Shown piece by piece: positions 872-55,527 of a stretch of DNA of 64,000 nucleotides (positions within the stretch are counted from its first letter, which is position 1; each line of letters begins with the position of its first letter). The translations under genes were made by a program, and so were the position numbers. Source of the DNA: Oikopleura dioica (Eukaryota; Animalia; Chordata). The DNA lies in NCBI GenBank assembly GCA_907165135.1, contig OU015568.1:9052001-9116000 (forward strand), given 5' to 3'. The notes under the pieces are model-generated. The model was not told the origin of the DNA and ran no database searches. It saw only the letters and a list, made by a program, of their open reading frames with translations.

Positions 872-3800
872 ATGGTTATTCAAGCGAATGGAATCGATTA
901 TCACGCTATTGAGATACAACTGGACAATACCATCTTTTCAAGTACAGTGTTTCTCTTGGATTTTTGGCTAAATGATGATTTCTAGAGGAAAAAATAGAGA
1001 ACACTCCATCGCGAGAAGACGGAATCGACGAAGAAACAGAAATTGATTTACGAAAAATCGGAGCGGAGTTGATTCAAAAAGCCGGGATTTACCTCGATTT
1101 ACCGCAAGTAGCAATCGCCTGCGCTCAAGTTATTTTCCAGCGATTCTACTTTACGAAAAGTTTGGTCACGTGTGATGTTTGCGTCGCGGCAAAAGCCTCC
1201 ATATGGCTCGCCTCGAAGATCGAAGAAGACGTCCGGCGGCCACGTGACGTGATAAACGTCTTCCATATGTTGGAGCAGCAGCGGCTTGGAAAACCCTGCA
1301 TCCCGATGGTCTTCGATCAAAAAGGCTTGAAAGTCTATCACGAGATCAAAAAAGACTTGATAAAAATGGAACACAAGATCCTTGCCGAAGACGATTTCAA
1401 ATAACTCGTTCAAAAATTTTTTTTAACACACCCTTTTTTTGTGCTCATTTGAAAGAGCGTGAAAAACTGGTCCAGAAAATGCTGGTCTTATCATCGGTGA
1501 CGTCACGAGTGGCGCGCGGGCGCCCCCTAAAGGTCTAATTAGGTCAATTGCGGGCTACGCGATTTCTCCGGTCATGCATATCGCACATGCATGGTTAGCA
1601 TCTAGAATTGATCGTCGTGAGCAGGGCTACATGCCCCGGCCAAAATCGTCAAAATCGGACCACGTCTTCACCAGCTGGTTGACCGGCAAATATCTCAAAA
1701 TGACAAAATCACTTACTTTTGATAAAGGCAACCTACCGATGGAAGTAGGGGGTGGCCCCGGACTCGAGCCCGAGTTACTGCCGTATTCGGCCACTTAGTG
1801 CCGGAGGACCTCCCGGAGGACTCCTCTGCTGGAAGAAAAGCTGCTGGAAGACTTATATTGAAAAATATAAATACAAATAAAATTTAAAGCCATGATTGGC
1901 TAGTAATTGCCGTATTCAGCCACTAAGTGCCGGAGGACCTCCCGGAGGACCTCTCTGCTGGAAGAAAAGCTGCTGGAAGACCAATTTTTAAAAATAAAAA
2001 TACAAATATAAAGCCTGGATTGGCTAAATATAGTCTAATTTGCCGCATTTGGCCACTTTCTGCCGGATGACCTCCCGGAGGACCCGCCTACTAAAAACCG
2101 ACTGCTGGTAAGCCAATATTAAAAAAAAAGAATAAATAAAAAGCCTTGCCACATCTGGCAAAACTCGATCACTTTAGTTCATACGCCAGTTCATACTTTT
2201 CAATCAGACTCAAAGCGAAGCCGACTCGAAGGGAAGGCCACGCCCGTTCATTCTTTTCAATCAGAGTCAGGGCGAAGCCGACCCGAAGGGGAGGCCACGC
2301 CCGTTCATTTTTTTAAATCAGATTAAGGGCGAAGCCGACCCGAAGGGGAGGCCGATCCCGTTCATTCTTTTCAATCAGAGTAAATACTAAGCCGACCCGA
2401 AGGGGAGGCCGCGCCCGTTCATTCTTTTCAATCAGAGTCAGGGCGAAGCCGACCCGAAGGGGAGGCCACGCCCATTCATTCTTTGCAATCAGAGTAAGGG
2501 CGAAGCCGACCCGAAGGGAAGGCCACGCCCGTTCATTTTATTAAATCAGATTAAGGGCGAAGCCGACCCGAAGGAAGGCCAATCCCGTTCATTCTTTTCA
2601 ATCAGAGTAAATACGAAGCCGACCCGAAGGGGAGGCCGCGCCGTTCATTCTTTTCAATCAGAGTCAGGGCGAAGCCGACCCGAAGGGGAGGCCAAGCCCA
2701 TTCATTCTTTGCAATCAAAGTAAGGGCGAAGCCGACCCGAAGGAAGGCCACGCCCGTTCATTTTATTAAATCAGATTGAGGGCGAAGCCGACCCGAAGGG
2801 AGGCCAAGCCCATTCATTCTTTGCAATCAGATTAAGGGCGAAGCCGACCCGAAGGGGAGGCCAATCCCGTTCATTCTTTTAATCAGAGAAATAACGAAGC
2901 CGACCCGAAGAGGAGGCCGCGCCCGTTCATTCCTTTCAATCAGAGTCTGGGCGAAGCCGACCCGAAGGGATGGCAACGTCTAATCATTTTATTCAATAAG
3001 AGTCAATGCGAATTGGATTGAAGCCCTTAATCGCCCTTAATCTGATTTAAAAGAATAAACGGGCGTCTGGCACTAAGTGGCTGAATACGGCAATAACAAG
3101 CCAATCATGGCTTTAAATTTTATTTTTATTTATATATTTTAATATAAGTCTTTCAGCAGCTTTTTATTCACCAGAAGAGCTTCGGGTCGGCTTCGCCCTT
3201 ACTCTGATTGAAAAGAATGAATGGGCTTGGCCTCCCCTTCGGGTCGGCTTCGCCCTGACTCTGACTGAAAAGAATGAACGGGCGTTGCCTACCCTTCGGG
3301 TCGGCTTCGCCCTGACTCTGATTGAAAAGAATGAACGGGCGCGGCCTCCCTTCGGGTCGGCTTCGTATGTACTCTGATTGAAAAGAATGAACGGGATTGG
3401 CCTCCCTTCGGGTCGGCTACGCCCTTAATCTGATTTAAAAAAATGAACGGGCGTGGCCTTCCCTTCGGGTCGGCTTCGCCCTGACTCTGATTGAAAAGAA
3501 TGACGGGCGCGGCCTCCCCTTCGGGTCGGCTTCGTATTTACTCTGATTGAAAAGAATGAACGGGATTGGCCTCCCCTTCGGGTCGGCTTCGCCCTAAATC
3601 TGATTTAATAAAATGAACGGGCGTGGCCTCCCCTTCGGGTCGGCTTCGCCCTGACTCTGATTGAAAAGAATGAACGGGCGTGGCCTTCCCTTCGAGTCGG
3701 CTTCGCTTTGAGTCTGATTGAAAAGTATGAACTGGCGTATGAACTAAAGTGATCGAGTTATGCCAGATGTCGCAAGGCTTTTTATTTATTCTTTTTTTTT

Positions 3801-6174
3801 AAATATTGGCTTACCAGCAGTCGGTTTTTTAGTAGGCGGGTCCTCCGGGAGGTCATCCGGCAGAAAGTGGCCAAATGCGGCATATTCGACTATATTTAGC
3901 CAATCCAGGCTTTATATTTGTATTTTTATTTTTAAAAATTGGTCTTCCAGCAGCTTTTCTTCCAGCAGAGGGGTCCTCCGGCACTTAGTGGCTGAATACG
4001 GCAATTACTAGCCAATCATGGCTTTAAATTTTATTTGTATTTATATTTTTCAATATTAGTCTTCCAGCAGCTTTTCTTCCAGCAGAGGAGTCCTCCGGGA
4101 GGTCCTCCGGCACTAAGTGGCCGAATACGGCAGTAACTCGGGCTCGAGTCCGGGGCCACCCCTACTTCCATCGGTAGGTTGCCTTTATCAAAAGTAAGTG
4201 ATTTTGTCATTTTGAGATATTTGCCGGTCAACCAGCTGGTGAAGACGTGGTCCGATTTTGACGATTTTGGCCGGGACATGTAGCCCTGCTCACGACGATC
4301 AATTCTAGATGCTAACCATGCATGTGCGATATGCATGACCGGAGAAATCGCGTAGCCCGCAATTGACCTAATTAGACCTTTAGGGGCGCCCGCGCGCCAC
4401 TCGTGACGTCACCGATGATAAGACCAGCATTTTCTGGACCAGTTTTTCACGCTCTTTCAAATGAGCACAAAAAAAGGGGGTGTTAGAAAAAATTTTTGAA
4501 CGAGTTATTTGAAATCGTCGAACTTGGCTTCTGCGTCCACGTGCAGCACCCTCACAAGATCATAATTATGTATCTGAATATGATCTACAAAACCGAGAGG
4601 AACAAAGAAAATCTCGTTCAGGAAAGTGGTTTAAATCATCTTCCTCCTTTGTTTTTGTGAGCTCGTGGGTATCAAAGTATTTTTAAAGAGCTCAAAGGAG
4701 CGTGCAAAAAGTTTTCAGAGTACTAAAGCTTATTTACTTCCGTGAATTTCTGTAGATAAGAGCCTAAGAGTTATTTAAATAAGTTGTCTTAAAAGGAACA
4801 CCAGCCAGTTATCTAAGGGGAAAACCGTGTTACTCGGGTAATTTTCCTTGTTGCCTTCAATTTTTAAAACCGCGATGCTCAGACTGCCTGGAACTACATG
4901 AATGATTCATTTCGAACTACTCTCTTTTGCGAGTATCAACCGGAAGTGATCGCCTGTGCTTGCATCTTTCTGGCCGCTCGGATGCTCAAAATCCCGCTGC
5001 CCGGGTCAGATGAAGAGACCGAGCCCAAACAGTGGTACGAACTGTACGATGCGAAAACGGAAGATGTTGAAGCGATCGCGATAAGGATTTTGCAGCTTTA
5101 TACGAATCCTACTGTAAGTGAGCAAAAAGAGTAAGATTGAGATGTAATTCTAGAGGTCTTTTGATGAGCTGATGGAAAAAGTGAAGCAACTGCAAGAAAT
5201 CAAAAAGAAACAGCTGAAAAAACTCAACGCCAGTTCGCAAGATTTAGACTCGCCCTTGGCCAGTGGTCAAAACAGTCCAGGTAAAAGTTGTCCTCGGAAG
5301 ACAGTCCTGCCATTTTACGTCAGATTAATCCTTTATCTGAGACAAATAGACTCCGTTTTTAATTTGCAAGGGGAAAAAGTAGAGAGGAATTTGATCGATC
5401 ATCTATATTTTATCGTCTCTTGACCGAGCCAGCTGACGATATTTAAATTAAATTTGTATCAAGATCATTTTATCGTATCACGGGCCTCTGTTTTTGTTTT
5501 ATTTCGCATTCCTCGAATACCTTGCTAGAAATTTTTTATGAGGCAGAGTCAGTCTCTAGTCATCCCGCGCTTGAAATTTGGCATGCTCGTTAGTTTTTTC
5601 TCGATTCTCAAGGTCATTTAAAAATGAGCAAATCCACTCATCTAAATCATGTGATCAATTAATGCTTTCATATTTGCCAAGGTCGTTATTTAATTAATTG
5701 ATTTTTATGTTTACGATGAATTTTATAGCTGCTGATTCACCAAATATCGAACAAGCGGTTACCAAGAACTCGTAAGTGCCCAAAGAAACAGTAATGAACT
5801 GTCGAGTAACTGATAAATTTGAAGGCCAAAGCGAAAAAGAACACGAACGAGATCGAGATCACGTGATTCTCGTCATCGCCACGAGAAGAAAGATCGACGA
5901 GATCGGGATAGGAAAAAGAGCCGAGATGCTTCTGATAGGGATCGTGAAAGAAGAAGGGATAGGGATCGACGAAGAAGCAAGGATAGAAAGCGCAGATCGT
6001 AAGTCCAAAAATCAAAGCGATTCCGAACGTTCCCTTATCACTGCTTGCATATCAAGGGGATTATGTAACATGCTGTTGAATTTGAATTTTAGGCGCTCGC
6101 GAACGAGGTCCAAATCCAATTCTCGCGATAAAGAGCGAAGGCGAGAGCGGCGATCGGACCGCGAACGGAAATAG
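872..6174 (+). CDS. CCNL1: Cyclin L (cyclin boxes + RS domain), interrupted by a foldback insertion at 1390-4519
   Basis: [56 protein letters not shown]|[42 protein letters not shown], then Arg/Ser/Asp-rich exons ending TAG 6174. ATG 872 directly follows tttag. Confidence 0.92.
2210..2995 (+). repeat. ~14 tandem 57-bp units in the foldback left arm
   Basis: GCCGAC recurs at 2277, 2334, 2391, 2448, 2505, 2562... (period 57); unit like GGGCGAAGCCGACCCGAAGGGGAGGCCACGCCCGTTCATTCTTTTCAATCAGAGTCA. Confidence 0.95.
3180..3715 (-). repeat. ~10 tandem 57-bp units, reverse orientation, in the foldback right arm
   Basis: Repeated CTTCGGGTCGGCTTCGCCCTGACTCTGATTGAAAAGAATGAACGGGCG, the reverse complement of the left array. 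Confidence 0.95.
4622..4882 (+). other. Non-canonical GA-AG intron in cyclin L
   Basis: CTC GTT CAG|GAAAGT...CTCAG|ACT GCC TGG restores the conserved [11 protein letters not shown] without indel. Confidence 0.8.
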
Positions 6175-7002
6175 AAAATCACCGGAAGAGGAAATAGAAA
6201 TAGCGAAAATCGCGAAATGCGCCTGTGAATACACGATCGACCGCGCGCCACTATCCCTTAATTGACCACTTCTCATCTTACCGAATCTCGTGTGCAAAAG
6301 AGCTTTAATCTCTCCAATCTTTGTCCATTGCGTATTTTGTGTATGTCTTGCGGTTCGGCCATTATCAACCGGGGCGAATTGATATTTCGCAAATGCGGTA
6401 TCTCCCAATTCCAATCAACTTTAGGAGAAAAGAAAAAAAACCACAGCCTCAAGGTCTGCTATCGCGTTATTTTCCGGCCACGAAACAGAGACCCGCACCT
6501 GTGGGAAATCGCAGCGGGGATCATTTGACTCCGCGCCGGGACTTAGCAATTACAAATTTAGATTTTTCATCCCCTGCTTTGTTCGCCCCTGCGGCTTTCC
6601 TGGGAATTTATGACCGCCGTTTTTCCAGGATTATCGGATTAGTCCTTGTTGATTTCCAAATAGTTCAATAGAAAACAGTGCATTTTTTCTGAAATCTTGA
6701 AAATTTTGCTCATTTATTTGGCCTTTTTCCATTATTTCTCCCTCCGTTACTCTCGTAAATTATGTCTGTGATCCGCTTCGCGTATTGGCCGGGAAAAATA
6801 TAAATTTTTCGCCTTCGAACAGCCATAGCTCACGTTATACTTTATGAAACCAAGGGATGAAGGTATCTTTCGAAAGCTCAGAATCTGAGGATTGGGGGAA
6901 CGTAAAAATCATTTCGGAAAATCGACATTTCTGATTGGCCGAAAATTTGAAATAATTATTTTTGCCAGTCAACATCAACTTTTTTCAAATGTTTTTTCGG
7001 GG

Positions 7003-7273
7003 ACGCTCGTCTAAATTACCAAAGATTTTTGGTAATGCATTACCAAAAATTGGTAATCCATTACCAAACTTTTTTCATAAGTTCTGATTTTTTGTCCAAA
7101 AAATGAGTAAATCACTCCCAAACGTTTTCTATCACACAGGCGCGGAGCGCACAAGGGCTCTTTGACTAAACAAAATTGGCACTTTTCGGGAAGTTTGGTA
7201 ATGCATTACAAAAAATTGGTAATGGATTACCAAAATTGGTAATGCATTACCAATTGGTAATTTAGACGAGCGT
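7003..7273. mobile_element. ~270-bp MITE-like inverted-repeat element with palindromic sub-repeats
   Basis: ACGCTCGTCTAAATTACCAA at 7003 and TTGGTAATTTAGACGAGCGT ending 7273; internal TTGGTAATGCATTACCAA-type palindromes in both arms; TSD not resolved. Confidence 0.75.
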
Positions 7274-8141
7274 TTCCCTGTTTTTTCTTTCCTCCAATCC
7301 TCAGAAACTGAGCTTTTTAAAAATGTATCAATCACGTGATTTCATCATCTCTAACGTGAGATATGGCAGTTCGTAGGAAATTCATAAAAATGCTCTCAGA
7401 ATCGCCCCAGGCAATGAAAAGAAGTTTTTTCCAGGTGATTTCTAGGTTTTCGATGATGACTAAAACGATCAACATAATGATTTTCCCCCTAGTTGAAATT
7501 TTTGTCAAAATCGAAAATTTATATTTTTTCCGACCATTCTACTCGTGAGAGTCCATTCTTGGAATTGAATATTATTTTTGAACGTATGCCCAGTAGGCCG
7601 AGCGGCTTTCTTGGCACGTAACTCTAGCTTACAATTACCGTCTTTTTCAGTTTTAATCTCGTGGATAAATAATCGTGTTCCGTCGTTGAAGATCTTTGTG
7701 TATTTATTTTTAGCGCCCTTTCTACCGTTTTCTCACAAAAAGAAAATCACCGATATTCAAGTGGATACGCAGCTGTACGTGCCTATACGCGTATGTCTAA
7801 AAAATAAACCCTGTATCATCCCTTTTTTGAGCTTCAACTTTCATTCACCAGTTTCAGTGAAGCGCCAAGTGCGCGCGCGTGCGCCGCACTACGAGCATGG
7901 CGCTAAACTGAAACCAAAAATTTAAAACTCAAAAAAGATTGAGAAAAATAATGTGAAGACAAGCTTGTCAAAAAGAAGCAAAATAACTTGACAAGTTATA
8001 TCAACAACTCAAAATTTGAACTTCACCTTTTTTAAATAAAAAAACTGCCAGTATATTGAAAAATACGAAAAAAACAAAGAAAGAGATTAAAGAAGAAATC
8101 CGAAAATGGGGTATTTTCAGTGTCGGTCTCCTCCTCGCCAA

Positions 8142-11100
8142 ATGGCGTCGGATGGAGGAGAGAAAATGTTCGATCCGGTGCTGTTCGACGTCACCAGAAT
8201 TCCAGCAGATGATATAGCGACACAGATTACAAAGGAAGATTTTGAAGTGTTTCAGAATATCCGCCCGGACGAGGTAAGAACAAATTATCGTTTTGAATCG
8301 TTTATCGTGCGTTACATCCTTATTTTTTGGCCAATTTGCGCACTTTCTAATGAGCACAAGAAAGGGGGGTGCTAGGATTTCGAATCTCAACTCCTTATTG
8401 AAATTGGCCTTTGCCATTTTTGGTCGACTTAAGGGGGCTGGGTAAAGGCATGCTTGATTTTTGTTTATTTTAGAAGCAATTTTGGATAAGGAAGAGCTGC
8501 TTCCTTTTTCCCTTTCGAAATTAACCTTGAACCGTGTTCTTTTCCTAGAGCGGAAGTATAAACGACTCTAGTAAAACACATAAACCTATCTTGAGCGTGG
8601 CACCTTTTTGGAGCCCCGCATGAGAGCATGAACTTTTTGGCGAAGTCTTAATTTATTATTTTCTGCGCAAACGTTGTCTTGGAGCAAAGAATCGCATTGA
8701 TCCCGTCTCAATGGGGTGTGACGCCTTTCAGTGCGCCGCTTTGTTCTTTATGAATGGCCCTGTTCATCGTCAACCCCTTTTTTTTTACTTTTGACGCGCG
8801 AAGAGTTAATGGAATTAAATCAATACTTCCTTTCACGTCAAAAGCTCTTCTTGTTGTTATTTTTGCTTATTCAGTTAGTCTTTCTTAGCTTAGCTTGCCT
8901 TAGTTAGGTTTTTTTCGACCAATCAAAATGGCCAAAAAAGACTTTCGGCTTATCGGAAACCGGAATAAAGTAAAGATCTTCGGGCCATATTTATAATAAG
9001 ATAAGACCCAGCGTCTTTTTTGGAGAAAGAACAGACTCTAAGACCCGCTTTTACAACTGACTTCATGGCTCAACTTAATTTTATAGCCTATAAATGCAAT
9101 TATGATGTTCTTTAGCCGGTGTTTTCACACGTGAGCGCTCATCATATTAGTGGAAAAGGGACTCGTTGATTCAGAATTTATGATCATCAGTGGCTCGTTA
9201 TCATCAATACACATGTGCATCAATAATGATCCTATTTTGGTCTTTTGAACTTTGGGCGCGTGTCTAATGAACGGGCCGAAATCAAAGTCAGAATCGATCC
9301 CTCCCATCTGCCGGAGTGGTAATAAACTTAGAACAGATCATGTGACCTTTATTTCCACAAATCGATAAATGTCTCGCCACGCGGTCACGGTTCGTTAGTA
9401 CAGTAGTAGCCGTGCTTCCACGAAATTGAAAGGACGCAGCCGACAGACCTTGTTTATGGTTATCTTTTTTATGGCTTTCGCTACTAATAAAAATGAAATT
9501 TGTATTTTTGAGGAATCACCTGTCGATCAGTGAGTGGTTTATTAGAGCGTATCGCGTGTCTGCCAATTTCGCTGATGAGCTAATTATTAGATGCTTTTTT
9601 AGAAAACATATACAGTAAGGGGTTGCTATTTCCAGGCTTATCTTAAAATTTATTCTTTGTTGATATTATAAATATTTTATTACAATAAAAATGATGCCTT
9701 TATGAAGACAAATGACAGTTTTATAAGTCGCGGGATTATTGATCGCATTGTTGCCCTGTTGACGGACTAATGAGGTTACTAACACATTGTTATTTATTTT
9801 TCACCTTCGTGTACCCGCTCGCAAAAATATTTACGCTTTTGGTTTCAGTTGACCTGTGTCGGATGGAGCGGGCGCAACAAACAGGAGCTATCCCCCAACG
9901 TGGTCGAAATGACGCAGCGCTTCAACAGGACTTCTTTCTGGGCCATCTCGGTGATCTTACAGACGCAAAACTTGAAACTACGAGTGGAAGTGCTTACACA
10001 GTTCATTCGCATCGCCAGGCGACTTCACGACTTTTCAAACTACCACGGAATGTTGGCGATCATAAGCGCGCTCAGACACGTTGCAATTGACCGGCTAACC
10101 GATACGTGGTCGAGGATCTCAAGAGCCGACAGGAAACACTTCGAAGTCCTGTCTAAATTTGTTCCAGAAGGTGACGGGCACCAGCTTTTGAGGGAAAAAT
10201 TCGAGGCGATCCAGCTTCCCTGTATACCGCACTTGGGCTTGTTTCTCAAAGAACTGACGTACATCGACGTAGCGAATCCGATCGTCAACGGAATTGAGCC
10301 AGAAAGCAGAGTTATGAAAATGAACAATATTTTACGTCTCATCAGGTAAACTGACTGAAATCAACAACAAATCACTCCAGACTTATTTGAGCTAGCTTTA
10401 TATTTCATTTTCATTTTCAGCGAGTTTCAAATGAGCGACTACTCGGATTTGCCAAGTCTACCTTACATACAATCCTACTTGAAAAGTTTCGACTACATCA
10501 GCGAGCTGCAGCGCTTCTTGGAAGACGACAATTACAAGGTTTGTCTATTGAACGCAGCTGAATTATTAATTGGCCTAATGAGCGGATCTTCCCACAATTG
10601 AGCTGCCCAAAAACTAATAATCATTACCGCCCAACGGTTCTCAGGTTCGCAAATTTATATCTCTTCTTCAGCAAAGTTACGAGCTCCAGCCCAAATTTGA
10701 TAAAAAGTCGAAGAAGTTCGGGACAATGGACGACTTGAACAATCCCGCGCCGCGAAATTCAGTCACTTCTCGCTTCACCCGTGGTCACAGAAGAACAGTC
10801 TCCCTCGGCCGCTCCCCCAGACACAATCACGAGCTTTTGAGTACAGAACACCAGCCTACAGTGAGTTTGCTGGATGATCATCCATTGAGTCAATCTTCCT
10901 CGCCGGGGAGCATCAATGGCGTGCGAAATAGTTTGCCCGGAAATGGAATTAGCTGTATGCGCTTTACGAGAAGGAACGGGATAGAAATATATTTGCGCGG
11001 CAAATTTGACGAATGATGAGGGGGCTTCCCCGATTTTATTTTTCCATAAGGCTCGTTAAATATTTTTGTACCCGGAAACAAAGCCTCCGTCCTCAGCCCA

Positions 11101-29449: not shown

Positions 29450-30053
29450 GGGTGTCAACATCGATTTGATAAATTGTTGGACTCATAAGAGATACCCTTA
29501 CTAAATCGATGTTGACACCCTATACGGGAGGTGTACAATTTTTGTCGATTTCGGGATATAATCGCCAGCCAAATGGAACCGGTGAATCGAAATGACCTGA
29601 AAACTCTAATGAGTATTTGTGCACTCCTTACACACCTTTCCGCAAAATTTCAACGTGATAACCCACGCGAGCACTGCACAAGTACCGTTTTTCTCACCTC
29701 CACCCTCGCGCTCCGAGGAAAGAAAAAAACTGACAGCATTTTTTGGAGATCCCTAAGGTCTTGTTTAGATATTATTTATAGGTTTTCAAGTATGTAGAAT
29801 TTGAAAATCATACTTTCAGAGTGGTATCATGAATATTTAATAAAAAAATGACATAATGATATTATGAAAAGAGCAAATTCTAGCACTAAATCTTTAGTTT
29901 TCGAAAAATCTAAAAGTGCAGTTTAAAAGAGAATATTCGTTTTAGTATAATCTGAAATTTTCAGAAGATTATCTCAAAAGAAAGGCCAAATCGACAAAAA
30001 TTGTACACCTCCCGTAAGGGGGTTCTTTAGGCGGGCTCCCGTATAGGGGTTAA
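29450..30053. mobile_element. Composite of nested/abutting inverted-repeat (MITE-like) elements
   Basis: 18-bp IR GGGTGTCAACATCGATTT 29450-29467/29503-29520; 29-bp IR TACGGGAGGTGTACAATTTTTGTCGATTT 29523-29551/29988-30016; extra CTCCCGTATAGGGGTTAA at 30036-30053. Confidence 0.7.
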
Positions 30054-31614: not shown

Positions 31615-31831
31615 AAGGGTCCCAAGATAGGACTAGGGTCGGCTATCTGTGTAGAAAACCTGAGTCAGGTTAGGGTTAGGGTTAGGTTAGAAAATTAGAA
31701 AAGATTGAAATTATAACAGTTTAAATCAATAAAATTCTTGCGAAGCCGCTTTGATCTTCAGACTCTGACTCAGGTTTTCTACACAGGTTGCCGACCACGG
31801 ACATAAATTTCCTAGCCCTTATCCGACCCTT
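31615..31831. mobile_element. Hairpin MITE-like element containing a (TTAGGG)-like run
   Basis: Arms GGTCGGCTATCTGTGTAGAAAACCTGAGTCAG / CTGACTCAGGTTTTCTACACAGGTTGCCGACC plus outer GGGTC..GATAGGACTAGG / CCTAGCCCTTATCCGACCC; GGTTAGGGTTAGGGTTAGGTTAG inside. Confidence 0.7.
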
Positions 31832-32674: not shown

Positions 32675-32838
32675 CTTGGCTCGGCAACCTGTGTCCAAAA
32701 CCTGACTCAGGGCTTGAAATTTCATTCGAGCTCTTTCTGGCCCTGACTCAGGTTTTGGACACAGGTTGCCAAGCCAAGAACTTTTGGAGTCCCTAACTCT
32801 AACTTTAATCCTAACCGGGAAAGGCTAACCCTAACCAA
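32675..32838. mobile_element. Second copy of the same hairpin family, followed by a degenerate (CCCTAA)-like run
   Basis: CTTGGCTCGGCAACCTGTGTCCAAAACCTGACTCAGGGC...GCCCTGACTCAGGTTTTGGACACAGGTTGCCAAGCCAAG (32675-32778), then CCCTAACTCTAACTTTAATCCTAACC..GCTAACCCTAACC. Confidence 0.7.
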
Positions 32839-36610: not shown

Positions 36611-36680
36611 TAATTTAAAAAGTAAGGATCTGTCTACTTACGAATATCAATACCAACGTAATTCTCTGTCATTAAAATCT

Positions 36681-37303
36681 GATGATTTCAAAAAACTTTT
36701 TGTGGGGCCGGAAATCGGAAAAAATCTGTAAGTGCAGTTTTCTTCAGCTCGTCAAGACGAGTTGAATGATGGGTCTTACTCCTGGTAAATCTAAGGATTT
36801 ACCGGTTTACCGGCTGGTTACCGGAAAATACGTTGTCACCCGCCGTTTTTGTTCTAGAAGTGGTAAACAGATGATCGACCCAGGAAATTGTTCCTTATAG
36901 TCAGATCTCCTCTAGGCTCAAAGATGAGGCTCGTATCAATACTCTGAAGAGAGTTATCAGTAAAAACAGTAAATTTTACGTACATTTTGTTGTTGCTGCA
37001 CGTTCCTGATTTTCAGTCCCATTTCTGATAACTCTCTTCAGAGTATTGATACGAGCCTCATCTTTGAGCCTAGAGGAGATCTGACTATAAGGAACGATTT
37101 CCTGGGTCGATCATCTGTTTACCACTTCTAGAACAAAAACGGCGGGTGACAACGTATTTTCCGGTAACCAGCCGGTAAACCGGTAAATCCTTAGATTTAC
37201 CAGAGGTTAGACCCATCATTCAACTCGTCTCGACGAGCTGAAGAAAACTGCACTCACAGATTTTTTACGATTTCCGGCCCCACAAAAGTTTTTTGAAATC
37301 ATC
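36681..37303. mobile_element. 623-bp palindromic MITE/foldback with ~280-bp arms; 3-bp TSD TCT
   Basis: Starts GATGATTTCAAAAAACTT, ends AAGTTTTTTGAAATCATC; arms near-identical across ~36681-36960 / 37025-37303; TCT at 36678-36680 and 37304-37306. Confidence 0.93.
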
Positions 37304-37970
37304 TCTATCAGATATATTTTGAACGAAGAAAATCCCGATTTATCTAAGTAAAAAGGGAAAGTTTGTTACTTCCAGAATCTTTACAATTGTAATTCCATTT
37401 GGAAAGGAAGGAAGTAGCTTTAATCAGTCATTGCTCTCATCAAACAATTCGAACCTGTATTTGAAGATCAAAGAGTGGTTTAGTCTGCGACTCTTAGAAA
37501 TCTGTTTTTATTAAAAATGCCACAAAATCGTCTTGGGTTGAATACACTTAGCTGCATGAAATTGGCTTTTCAATATTTTAAAAATTCTGCGGCTAGCATG
37601 AAGACTCTGAGGTCGTCACAGCAATTATGTGATCAACCATCTTTTGGCATGGAAAGAAATTCATACGACATTGAGATACGTAGCCTCACGGCGGAAGCAT
37701 TACAAGTATGGACCCTGATCGAATAAATTAATTTTAGATGCATTGAACGTCACAAATCCAGGAGAAAGTTGACTGAAGAAGATGAGAATCAAAATGCCCT
37801 GCCTCGTAAAAAAATCTCGAAAAACATTCTGTTCAAAGTTGGTTTCCTTCGAACGTCGTTCATTTCATTTTATTTATTGGCAGTTTGTATTCGTATCCGT
37901 AAATTCCAGTGAAAAATGTGAGGCGATTTCAATGAAGATTGTGAAGCAGTAGTGATGATGACAGATTAGT

Positions 37971-53107: not shown

Positions 53108-55527
53108 ATGTATCGAGCAACTGTGGGAACGGGCAAGACGTTACTCGGTACTTTGCCTTTTACAGCTCAAATGGTGAACTTGCGGAAAAATCGTGATTTT
53201 ACGAAAATTGAAGATTTACGATGGTTATCTCCAAAAGTACAAATGTGAGAAGAACAGTAAATTGACGGAAGTGGAGAACTTCATGCGCTGTGAGAATTTT
53301 CTCCATGGAGGTAGAAAAAACCCCAACGAATAGTTTCCCCAAATCTTTGTTTTAGTAGTTGAAATTCCAGAAATTGCAAAAAGCGAGCGAATCTACCGTC
53401 ACGAAGCTGGTCATCTTCTCATTATACTCCTTCATTTTGAGTCTCTTTCCGTCTTTCCAGCCCTCGTCTCTTTCCAAAAACGCGCAGATCTAAAGCTCAA
53501 CGCTTACATAAAAGTCGTCGATCTCCCAGAAACGGGCAAGAAGACCTCGACTTCTGACGAAGAAAAGTTCAAGAGCTGGATTTTATATTCCGTCGCTGGG
53601 AAAGCCGCGGAAGCAGTATTCAATGGAACTGAAGGAACAACAGTTTATTCCTTATTGAAAAGGCTCCAGGAAAAAACGAATTCACGTGACCTGCAAATTG
53701 CTCGAATGTACGCATCAAAGGTAGATAAAGTTTTATTAAATAGGTTTAAGGCCGGCATAGTATCTTAATTGTTCCCAGCAGCAAAATTGAATCAGAGCAT
53801 ACGGTCCAAGTCGCGCCCATTGAGCAGAAAATCCACGGAAGAATCCCAGCGGCCCATTCGTTTTCAGAATGTAGCTTAGAGCTGGAAACAAACCGTTAAA
53901 CTTCCCAGGGTTGGTCATTATCACAGTTCTGGCATTCGTAAATGGCGAGCTTAAAATGTTCTTTTCATATTTGTTGAAAAAATGTCGCTGAACCTAGAAC
54001 AAGTGATAGCAAAGCCAGTAATAATCGCTGTGCAGAAAATCAGTCCCAATCGCTCAGCCTCGCTTGGTGCAGAATTATGACCGTAATTGTCGTAATCGCT
54101 ATCTTTCCACGAATGTAAAAATGGAAGAAAATTCTGGAGGGAGGACGACTTCATCGAGTTTTGATGATGATCGGGTGTTTTCTTGAGGAAATCTTTGACT
54201 TCGTTGTAGACGGCTACGTAGGTGATTCCAATGCTTTCGTGGGTTAAGTTTTTCCAAATATTGGCGTTGAAACCATTCAAATGTCAACCCTTTTTCCTCA
54301 TTGCTCTAGTAACACTTGTTCCAACACCTTCATAATAATTCGCCCATCTCAATGACACCGTTTGTTTTATATTATCCACCCGTTTTTTGAACCCCTCTAG
54401 AAAAGGGATGAGGACATCCTGAGATTATTTTAACCCCCCTACGCCACAGAATAGACCTTTACCTCTTATTTTAGCTGCATTGAGGCACTGTATGATGTCT
54501 GTACTCCGAGTCCATAGACTCCCCAAAAGGGGTCAAAATGAGCGAAATCGGGTTTTTCCGGCTTAATGACGTCATAAGTCAAAGAACATGTGACAATAAC
54601 TTTTTCTAAGTACCCCTACGCCACAGATCAGACCCTAAGCTACATTCTGGTAGTTTAGGGAACCCTCTGTGATAACTGTGGTCGGAGAGCATAGACTCCC
54701 CAGCTTGGGTTAATATAAAACAAACGGTGTCAATGGACTTCCCCCGACTTCCCTCGCCAGTTTATAAAGCGGTGGTGGTTTTCCTTGATAACCCTGCGCT
54801 CTCACTTTGAAAAGGTCGGTCGGATGCGCTATTGTCGCGGCCAGTCCAGCGGCGGTGGCACCTGCTGCCATTCTCGAAGCAATTCGCTGAATATCGGATT
54901 CCTTGTTGATCCCACGCTCAAATTGCTCCCGGAAGGGTTCATACAAGCCGAGTCGAAGAGATGAGTAGATGAGTTCTCGAGCCAGGGAAGCAGTAATTCC
55001 TCGATACCAGCCAGAAAACCCCTCTTGAACTATGATGTCTTTCATGACAACGGGAAATGGTCGCACTTGCCCGCGATTAGAGATTTGTTGAAAAACCATC
55101 GCAGTTTCAAAGGGCTACAGTCGTTATAGAATTTACTGACAAAATGGGAGATTTACATGGACGCATAATCCAGCAGTTGCGCAGGATACACCCGCTAAGC
55201 CGATGTTCAGGACTTGCTCTTGATTCATCCTTGCGCTACGTCATAACTAGAGAACATTCATTTTCCAAACATCTCTGAAAACTTCGCTGATCTAAATTCT
55301 AGAGAGTCCTCTTAAAAAAAGATTAATTTTAAATTATTCATTTAAAATCTTTATTCTAGCTCTCCGACGACGAAACGAAGCAAGAAGAAATCATCGCTGC
55401 CAGTTTTTATCAAGCAATAAAAGAAATCAAGGCGAACGAAAGAAAATACGAAGTCATCTTGGAAGCTATAAAGAAAAACAGCTTCATCACAGCATCTGAA
55501 ATTTTCAAATTATTCGAAGAGCTTTAA
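53108..55527 (+). CDS. Stand-alone FtsH/M41-type metallopeptidase domain protein (no AAA domain)
   Basis: YRHEAGHL (53400-53414), SVAGKAAEAVFNG, NSRDLQIARMYA|intron 53721-55359|LSDDETKQEEIIAASFYQAIKEIKANERKYEVILEAIKKNSFITASEIFKLFEEL*; exon phases are consistent. Not in the ORF track. Confidence 0.72.
53736..55228 (-). CDS. Mitochondrial carrier (SLC25, UCP/dicarboxylate-like), nested antisense in the M41 gene intron
   Basis: GWYRGITASLARELIYSSLRLGLYEP, IAHPTDLFKVRAQ, GPLGFFRGFSAQWARLGPYALIQFCCWEQLR. Confidence 0.88.
54434..54702. repeat. Two diverged ~90-bp direct repeats in the SLC25 intron
   Basis: ACCCCTACGCCACAGA...CATAGACTCCCC at ~54434-54530 and ~54612-54702. Confidence 0.55.

What the first reader, a model, noticed from the sequence alone, without database searches (positions are those of the whole stretch)
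36678..37306. Two unrelated-looking palindromic elements share a 17-bp terminus and a 3-bp TSD: candidate unclassified DNA-transposon family
Seen: the termini GACGATTTCAAATAACT (1390 element) and GATGATTTCAAAAAACT (36681 element) match at 15/17 positions. Both elements have 3-bp TSDs (GAA, TCT), while their internal sequences share nothing obvious. Known: 3-bp-TSD superfamilies usually start CAC (CACTA), GG with TWA targets (PIF/Harbinger), GG (Zator) or TAG (Academ); GA(C/T)GATTTC ends with non-TWA targets fit none cleanly. Inference: one transposase in trans mobilises a heterogeneous set of long-arm foldbacks.
Basis: partly seen in the sequence, partly recalled or inferred. Interest (0 to 1): 0.85.

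Follow-up and report, generated by a model that had tools for sequence, protein, structure and literature searches.

The report
Foldback transposons with three-base duplications
Two young, hairpin-shaped pieces of jumping DNA in the plankton tunicate Oikopleura share the same ends and a three-base insertion scar, so they are passengers of one kind of cut-and-paste enzyme, most likely a Sola2-like transposase that duplicates three bases instead of the usual four.

Summary
The genome is Oikopleura dioica OKI2018 (PAR). Element B (36681-37303, TSD TCT) and element A (1390-4519, TSD GAA) are young long-arm foldbacks whose 17-bp ends match at 15/17. The Norway cyclin L ortholog shows A's empty site, so exactly 3 bases were duplicated. 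A metagenome scan gave a third, independent element C (256 bp, TSD AAT, same end) in a larvacean-like contig. C links A and B, and all three share a subterminal GCTC-N8-GA(G/A) motif, so the interiors are not wholly unrelated. None has a transposase ORF: these are non-autonomous cut-and-paste elements of one superfamily by the Repbase end rule. 'Unclassified' is probably wrong: this scan already noted, on other DNA of this genome, several Sola2-like transposase elements with 3-bp TSDs, two with GAC termini. I could not fetch those loci, so the link is inferred (about 65%). A fourth element here (54354-54731, GACACC ends, TSD AAT) shows that 'GAC' alone does not identify the family. PIF, CACTA, Academ and canonical 4-bp Sola2 fail tested features. 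Verdict: a new variant of a known kind, modest interest.

The parts
36681..37303 (.). Element B: 623-bp palindromic non-autonomous DNA transposon
36678..36680 (+). Left TSD of B (TCT)
37304..37306 (+). Right TSD of B (TCT)
36681..36963 (+). B left arm; starts with the 17-bp end GATGATTTCAAAAAACT
37022..37303 (-). B right arm, 96.8% complementary to the left arm
36964..37021 (.). B 58-bp non-palindromic spacer
36738..36761 (+). Subterminal TTTT-N-GCTC-N8-GAG motif in B (mirror copy 37224-37247)
1390..4519 (.). Element A: 3130-bp modular foldback inserted in a cyclin L coding exon
1387..1389 (+). Left TSD of A (GAA, one Glu codon of cyclin L)
4520..4522 (+). Right TSD of A (GAA)
1390..1406 (+). 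A left end GACGATTTCAAATAACT (mirror copy 4503-4519)
1434..1457 (+). Subterminal TTTT-N-GCTC-N8-GAG motif in A (mirror copy 4452-4475)
2183..2969 (+). 57-bp tandem array inside A, 13.9 copies (inverted array of 9.9 copies at 3180-3738)
54354..54731 (.). Element D (related class, different family): 378 bp, 24-bp TIR starting GACACCG, TSD AAT, in a coding exon of a mitochondrial-carrier-like gene

Best explanation
A and B are non-autonomous cut-and-paste DNA transposons of a larvacean lineage with GA(C/T)GATTTCAAA ends. A transposase made elsewhere in the genome binds the ends and probably the subterminal GCTC-N8-GAG motif, excises the element and inserts it with a 3-nt stagger into AT-leaning targets without a fixed consensus (GAA, TCT, AAT). 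The foldback shape most simply comes from internal deletion of long-TIR parents that leaves TIR joined to TIR. The enzyme is most likely one of the Sola2-like DDD transposases with 3-bp TSDs noted elsewhere in this genome. Shown: ends, TSD, empty site of A, third element, no coding capacity. Inferred: trans-mobilisation, role of the motif, origin by deletion, Sola2-like identity. The first part (one superfamily, non-autonomous) is about 0.95 sure; the stated confidence is for the whole, with the Sola2-like partner.
For: Shared ends beyond chance. 3-bp TSD in three of three elements. Empty site in two Norway cyclin L haplotypes with a single Glu codon. Element C has a perfect 21-bp TIR, 21/22 identical to B's end and 77% like A's over 76 nt; its left end is seen in four assemblies and the whole element in two. 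No long ORF. Repbase end rule met. Sola: DDD transposase, very variable ends, TIRs of 11-1124 bp (PMC10741241); Dictyostelium Sola2 ends read GAA...TTC and GAG...CTC (PMC3627910 suppl. 11). Unchecked scan notes of Sola2-like elements with 3-bp TSDs, two with GAC termini.
Against: I never saw an autonomous element with these ends, so the Sola2 link rests on unchecked notes that give only the first three bases. Element D starts GAC and has a 3-bp TSD but differs from base 4 on, so the noted GAC elements could be D-type. Published Sola TSDs are 4 bp. L033 holds an A-like arm (87% over 333 nt from position 9) without the first 8 bases of the end: arm modules can occur with a lost or different terminus.
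Confidence: 0.65

Rival explanations
1. The elements depend on a transposase of an undescribed superfamily; the Sola2-like elements of this genome are a separate group that happens to share a GAC start and a 3-bp TSD.
For: No described superfamily that I could check has both a GAY start and a non-TWA 3-bp TSD; 44% of OKI2018 repeats were unclassified (PMC8008620); D shows several GAC-started families exist.
Against: Five or more noted Sola-like elements in the same genome share the unusual 3-bp TSD (unchecked); Sola2 ends can start GA. A second, unknown enzyme is an extra assumption.
Confidence: 0.2
2. They are derivatives of a known 3-bp-TSD superfamily with drifted ends (Zator, IS3EU, Academ, PIF/Harbinger-Pangu, or EnSpm/Chapaev3).
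For: TSD length fits these groups (Academ 3 bp; Harbinger TNA/ANT; Zator, IS3EU from my own knowledge). C and D both have AAT, which fits the Pangu ANT pattern.
Against: GAA and TCT fit neither TNA/TWA nor ANT; ends are not CAC, TAG, TAY or GG.
Confidence: 0.12
3. A and B are unrelated palindromes whose ends match by chance.
For: The motif is also a common codon string (DDFKKL): 114 unpaired hits in viral contigs.
Against: 0 of 2.0 million random pairs reach 15/17; the match sits exactly at the outer ends; C repeats it as a paired TIR with its own 3-bp TSD; only 1 loose pair without TSD among about 1.1 Mb of control loci.
Confidence: 0.02

Closest known systems
Sola2 DNA transposons (Sola superfamily; Bao et al. 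2009, read here only through PMC10741241 and PMC3627910)
   Same: GA-started ends (DFa-1/-2: GAA, GAG), long and variable TIRs, AT-leaning targets, non-autonomous derivatives by internal deletion.
   Different: TSD is 3 bp, not 4; third base is C/T, not A/G; the transposase was not seen here.
Foldback / long-TIR MITE-like elements (Drosophila FB, nematode Tm1, clam DTC84 with internal tandem repeats)
   Same: Long modular inverted arms, internal tandem arrays (A), no coding capacity.
   Different: A shape class, not a lineage; FB and Tm1 are Mutator-like with long (about 9-bp) TSDs (own knowledge; Tm1 title).
PIF/Harbinger (Tourist MITEs, Pangu)
   Same: 3-bp TSD, MITE derivatives.
   Different: Targets are TNA/TWA or ANT; GAA and TCT fit neither.
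Zator
   Same: 3-bp TSD (own knowledge).
   Different: GG ends and short TIRs (own knowledge); here GA(C/T) ends and arms of 283 to about 1350 bp.

Membership tests
Non-autonomous TIR DNA transposon | Terminal inverted repeats | tested here: met
   A, B, C
Non-autonomous TIR DNA transposon | TSD confirmed by an empty site | tested here: met
   A: Norway ortholog has one codon at the site. B and C: flanks only, no empty site available.
Non-autonomous TIR DNA transposon | No transposase ORF | tested here: met
   longest ORF inside A 101 aa, no Pfam hit; inside B 44 aa
A, B, C in one superfamily (Repbase rule) | Same TSD length and bases 1-11 aligned with at most 1 mismatch | tested here: met
   GACGATTTCAA vs GATGATTTCAA; rule from PMC4455052
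Sola2 | Sola2-type DDD transposase enclosed by these ends | not testable with these tools
   No autonomous copy could be fetched; only unchecked notes
Sola2 | 4-bp TSD | tested here: not met
   3 bp in A, B, C; 4 bp in the literature. A alone allows an asymmetric CGAA reading, B does not.
Sola2 | Ends starting G-R-G / GA(A/G) | tested here: inconclusive
   GA matches DFa ends; third base C/T departs from GRG (GRG from my own knowledge)
Sola | TIR length within 11-1124 bp | tested here: inconclusive
   B 283 bp and C 21 bp fit; A arms pair over 1353 bp including tandem arrays
PIF/Harbinger | TNA/TWA (or Pangu ANT) target | tested here: not met
   GAA and TCT fit neither; only AAT fits ANT
CACTA/CMC | CAC(T) ends | tested here: not met
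   ends are GA(C/T)GA
Zator | GG ends with 3-bp TSD | tested here: not met
   TSD length fits, ends do not (GG from own knowledge)
Academ / IS3EU | TAG / TAY ends | tested here: not met
   end motifs from own knowledge
Introner (seamlessly spliced element) | Donor and AG acceptor that remove the element plus one TSD exactly | tested here: not met
   none of the five exact-removal windows of A ends in AG
Described Repbase/Dfam family | Match to a library consensus | not testable with these tools
   no TE library among the tools

The most novel reading that the evidence does not exclude
A larvacean-wide transposon lineage, distinct enough from Sola2 to need its own group, cuts with a 3-nt stagger and leaves GA-started, stem-closed insertions that keep the reading frame and can be spliced as GA-AG introns (A: +6 residues LFEIVE via the AG at 4503-04; D: one codon lost via an AG 3 nt past the TSD), making it a source of Oikopleura's non-GT introns.
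Probability: 0.1. Interest if true: 0.7.

Novelty: new variant of a known kind. Interest (0 to 1): 0.35.

Why it matters
It gives a diagnostic end-plus-TSD signature for part of the 44% of OKI2018 repeats that were left unclassified, and extends it to a second, larvacean-like species. If the partner is Sola2-like, TSD length is not fixed within Sola, which matters for rule-based MITE classification. A young insertion in the cyclin L exon points to recent activity, so an intact copy could serve as a native transposon tool in a model chordate without many. It is a classification and mobilome result, not a new mechanism.

Tried and rejected
A published Sola2 protein (PMC3627910 suppl. Pattern scans: viral contigs gave only unpaired coding matches or nothing; prokaryote genomes 8 unpaired hits; metagenomes 7 unpaired hits plus C. 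About 90 kb of other larvacean loci (L001, L022, L023, L144, L146) held no paired GAY element. Searching with the spurious 101-aa ORF of A's arm found arm relatives (L033-L036) but no transposase. Rfam: nothing near a gathering score. Bao 2009 and Yuan and Wessler 2011 were not held. No paper found on Sola in Oikopleura. The host of C could not be named. A 4-bp TSD reading was rejected because it fits A only.

Full report
Source. A SET-domain ORF next to element B is 100% identical to Oidioi.mRNA.OKI2018_I69.PAR.g10964, so the window is from the pseudo-autosomal region of the Okinawa Oikopleura dioica assembly.

Observation. Element B spans 36681-37303. Its arms (36681-36963 and 37022-37303) are 96.8% complementary around a 58-bp spacer, and TCT flanks both sides. 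Element A spans 1390-4519; its arms pair over 1353 bp at 95.4%, the first 400 bp at 98.75%, and contain 129-bp-scale modules and two inverted 57-bp tandem arrays. GAA flanks both sides. The two ends match at 15 of 17 bases. The consensus with up to two mismatches is found only at these four ends (0.24 expected), and none of 2.0 million random 17-mer pairs from the window reaches 15/17. Of TSD lengths 2-10 only 3 works.

The TSD is real. A lies inside a cyclin L coding exon. Removing A and one GAA restores [19 protein letters not shown]. Both Norway haplotypes have this peptide with a single Glu codon and no insertion, so exactly three bases were duplicated. The OKI annotation calls a 236-aa C-terminal model that starts at 4568, after A; this is weak evidence of disruption, because one Norway haplotype without the insertion is also annotated in two pieces. 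No empty site for B was available; synteny with Norway breaks beside the SET gene.

A third member. One scan of metagenome contigs with a pattern merged from the ends of A and B gave eight hits; seven are unpaired coding matches, one is a paired element. Element C (L015:3626-3881, 256 bp) has a perfect 21-bp TIR GATGATTTCAAATAACTTTTT and an AAT duplication, in an intron of a compact, larvacean-like gene. Its end is 21/22 identical to B's, and its left 76 nt are 77% identical to A's. The left junction is the same in four assemblies, the whole element is in two, and one contig breaks 15 nt inside it, as expected for a repeat. The host species is not identified. As a control, about 1.1 Mb of fetched loci gave only one other loose pair, without a TSD.

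The interiors are not wholly unrelated. A motif TTTT-N(2-5)-GCTC-N8-GAG lies 45-80 nt inside all four arms and nowhere else in the window (the pattern was drawn after the fact); C's left end has a GAA variant. A weaker ACC(A/G)GCTGGTT(G)ACCGG motif is shared by A, B and C (6/300 and 11/300 shuffles). Relatives of A's arm modules and 57-bp repeat occur in other marine contigs (L033-L036). In L033 the match starts at base 9 and the first eight bases differ, so arm modules can be found with a lost or different end.

What it is. No element has a transposase-sized ORF. By the Repbase rule for non-autonomous elements (same TSD length, bases 1-11 with at most one mismatch; PMC4455052) A, B and C belong to one superfamily. 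The mechanism that follows from established knowledge of DDE/D transposons is excision and reinsertion by a transposase supplied in trans, with a 3-nt stagger at the target. The three targets (GAA, TCT, AAT) share no consensus. The foldback shape is what internal deletion of a long-TIR parent leaves (inference). Since A and B have different arm bodies, they may come from different autonomous families; one single enzyme is not shown.

Which enzyme. Tested features exclude PIF/Harbinger (TNA or ANT targets), CACTA, Academ, IS3EU and typical Zator ends (end motifs from my own knowledge). Sola elements encode DDD transposases, have very variable ends and TIRs of 11-1124 bp, and 4-bp TSDs (PMC10741241; PMC3627910). 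Dictyostelium Sola2 ends read GAA...TTC and GAG...CTC. Earlier notes of this scan describe, on other DNA of this genome, Sola2-like or Sola-like transposase elements with 3-bp TSDs: s1-330352 and s1-409306 with GAC termini, s1-365277, s1-406171 and s1-400294. These are AI notes that I could not check, because no referenced query led to those loci. They changed my reading from 'unclassified' to 'probably Sola2-like', at about 0.65. A caution comes from this window: element D (54354-54731) has a 24-bp TIR starting GACACCG and an AAT duplication; removing it and three bases restores the frame of a mitochondrial-carrier-like exon. D shares only GAC and the TSD length with A, so the noted GAC elements could be D-type. 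Membership in canonical Sola2 fails on TSD length; 'works like Sola2' is the leading reading.

Splicing. None of the five windows that would remove A exactly ends in AG, so A is not a seamless intron. In-frame GA-AG options exist on paper: A would leave LFEIVE and D would lose one codon.

Verdict. A real pair of young non-autonomous DNA transposons with a shared, distinctive end and 3-bp TSD, present beyond this genome. New variant of a known kind; the autonomous side was already noted by this scan on other DNA. Interest 0.35.

Noticed in passing
window 54354-54731: 378-bp element with a 24-bp TIR (GACACCG...) and AAT TSD inside a coding exon of a mitochondrial-carrier-like gene (minus strand). 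Removal plus 3 nt restores the frame; a GA-AG splice ending 3 nt past the TSD would also be in frame.
   Followed up: partly
window 8295-8480: Insertion in a RasGEF intron, absent in Norway, with a 77% match to A's subterminal bases 35-91 in the same register from a degenerate end (GGCCAATTTC...); probably a decayed relative, next to a TTAAGGGGG end.
   Followed up: partly
window 1389/4505: GA donor at A's first base and an AG 15 nt inside its right end would give an in-frame cyclin L with six extra residues (LFEIVE).
   Followed up: partly
L033:395-735: A-like arm (87% over 333 nt) in a marine metagenome contig whose first 8 terminal bases differ (AGCGGAGA instead of GACGATTT).
   Followed up: partly
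L035:2920-3889: Older A-like arm (81-85%) split by an insertion with TTAAGGGG ends in another marine contig.
   Followed up: no
window 6786-7536: Nested inverted repeats with 20-21-bp TTGGTAATGCATTACCAA palindromic tandem units; likely another MITE.
   Followed up: no
window 29518-30021, 31633-31796, 32675-32778: Three further small TIR or hairpin elements in the AT-rich intergenic stretch; two share a CTGACTCAGGTTTT motif.
   Followed up: no
L015:1405-3380: Several introns of the host gene of C hold copies of one palindromic GCGAAGCTTCGC-type repeat.
   Followed up: no
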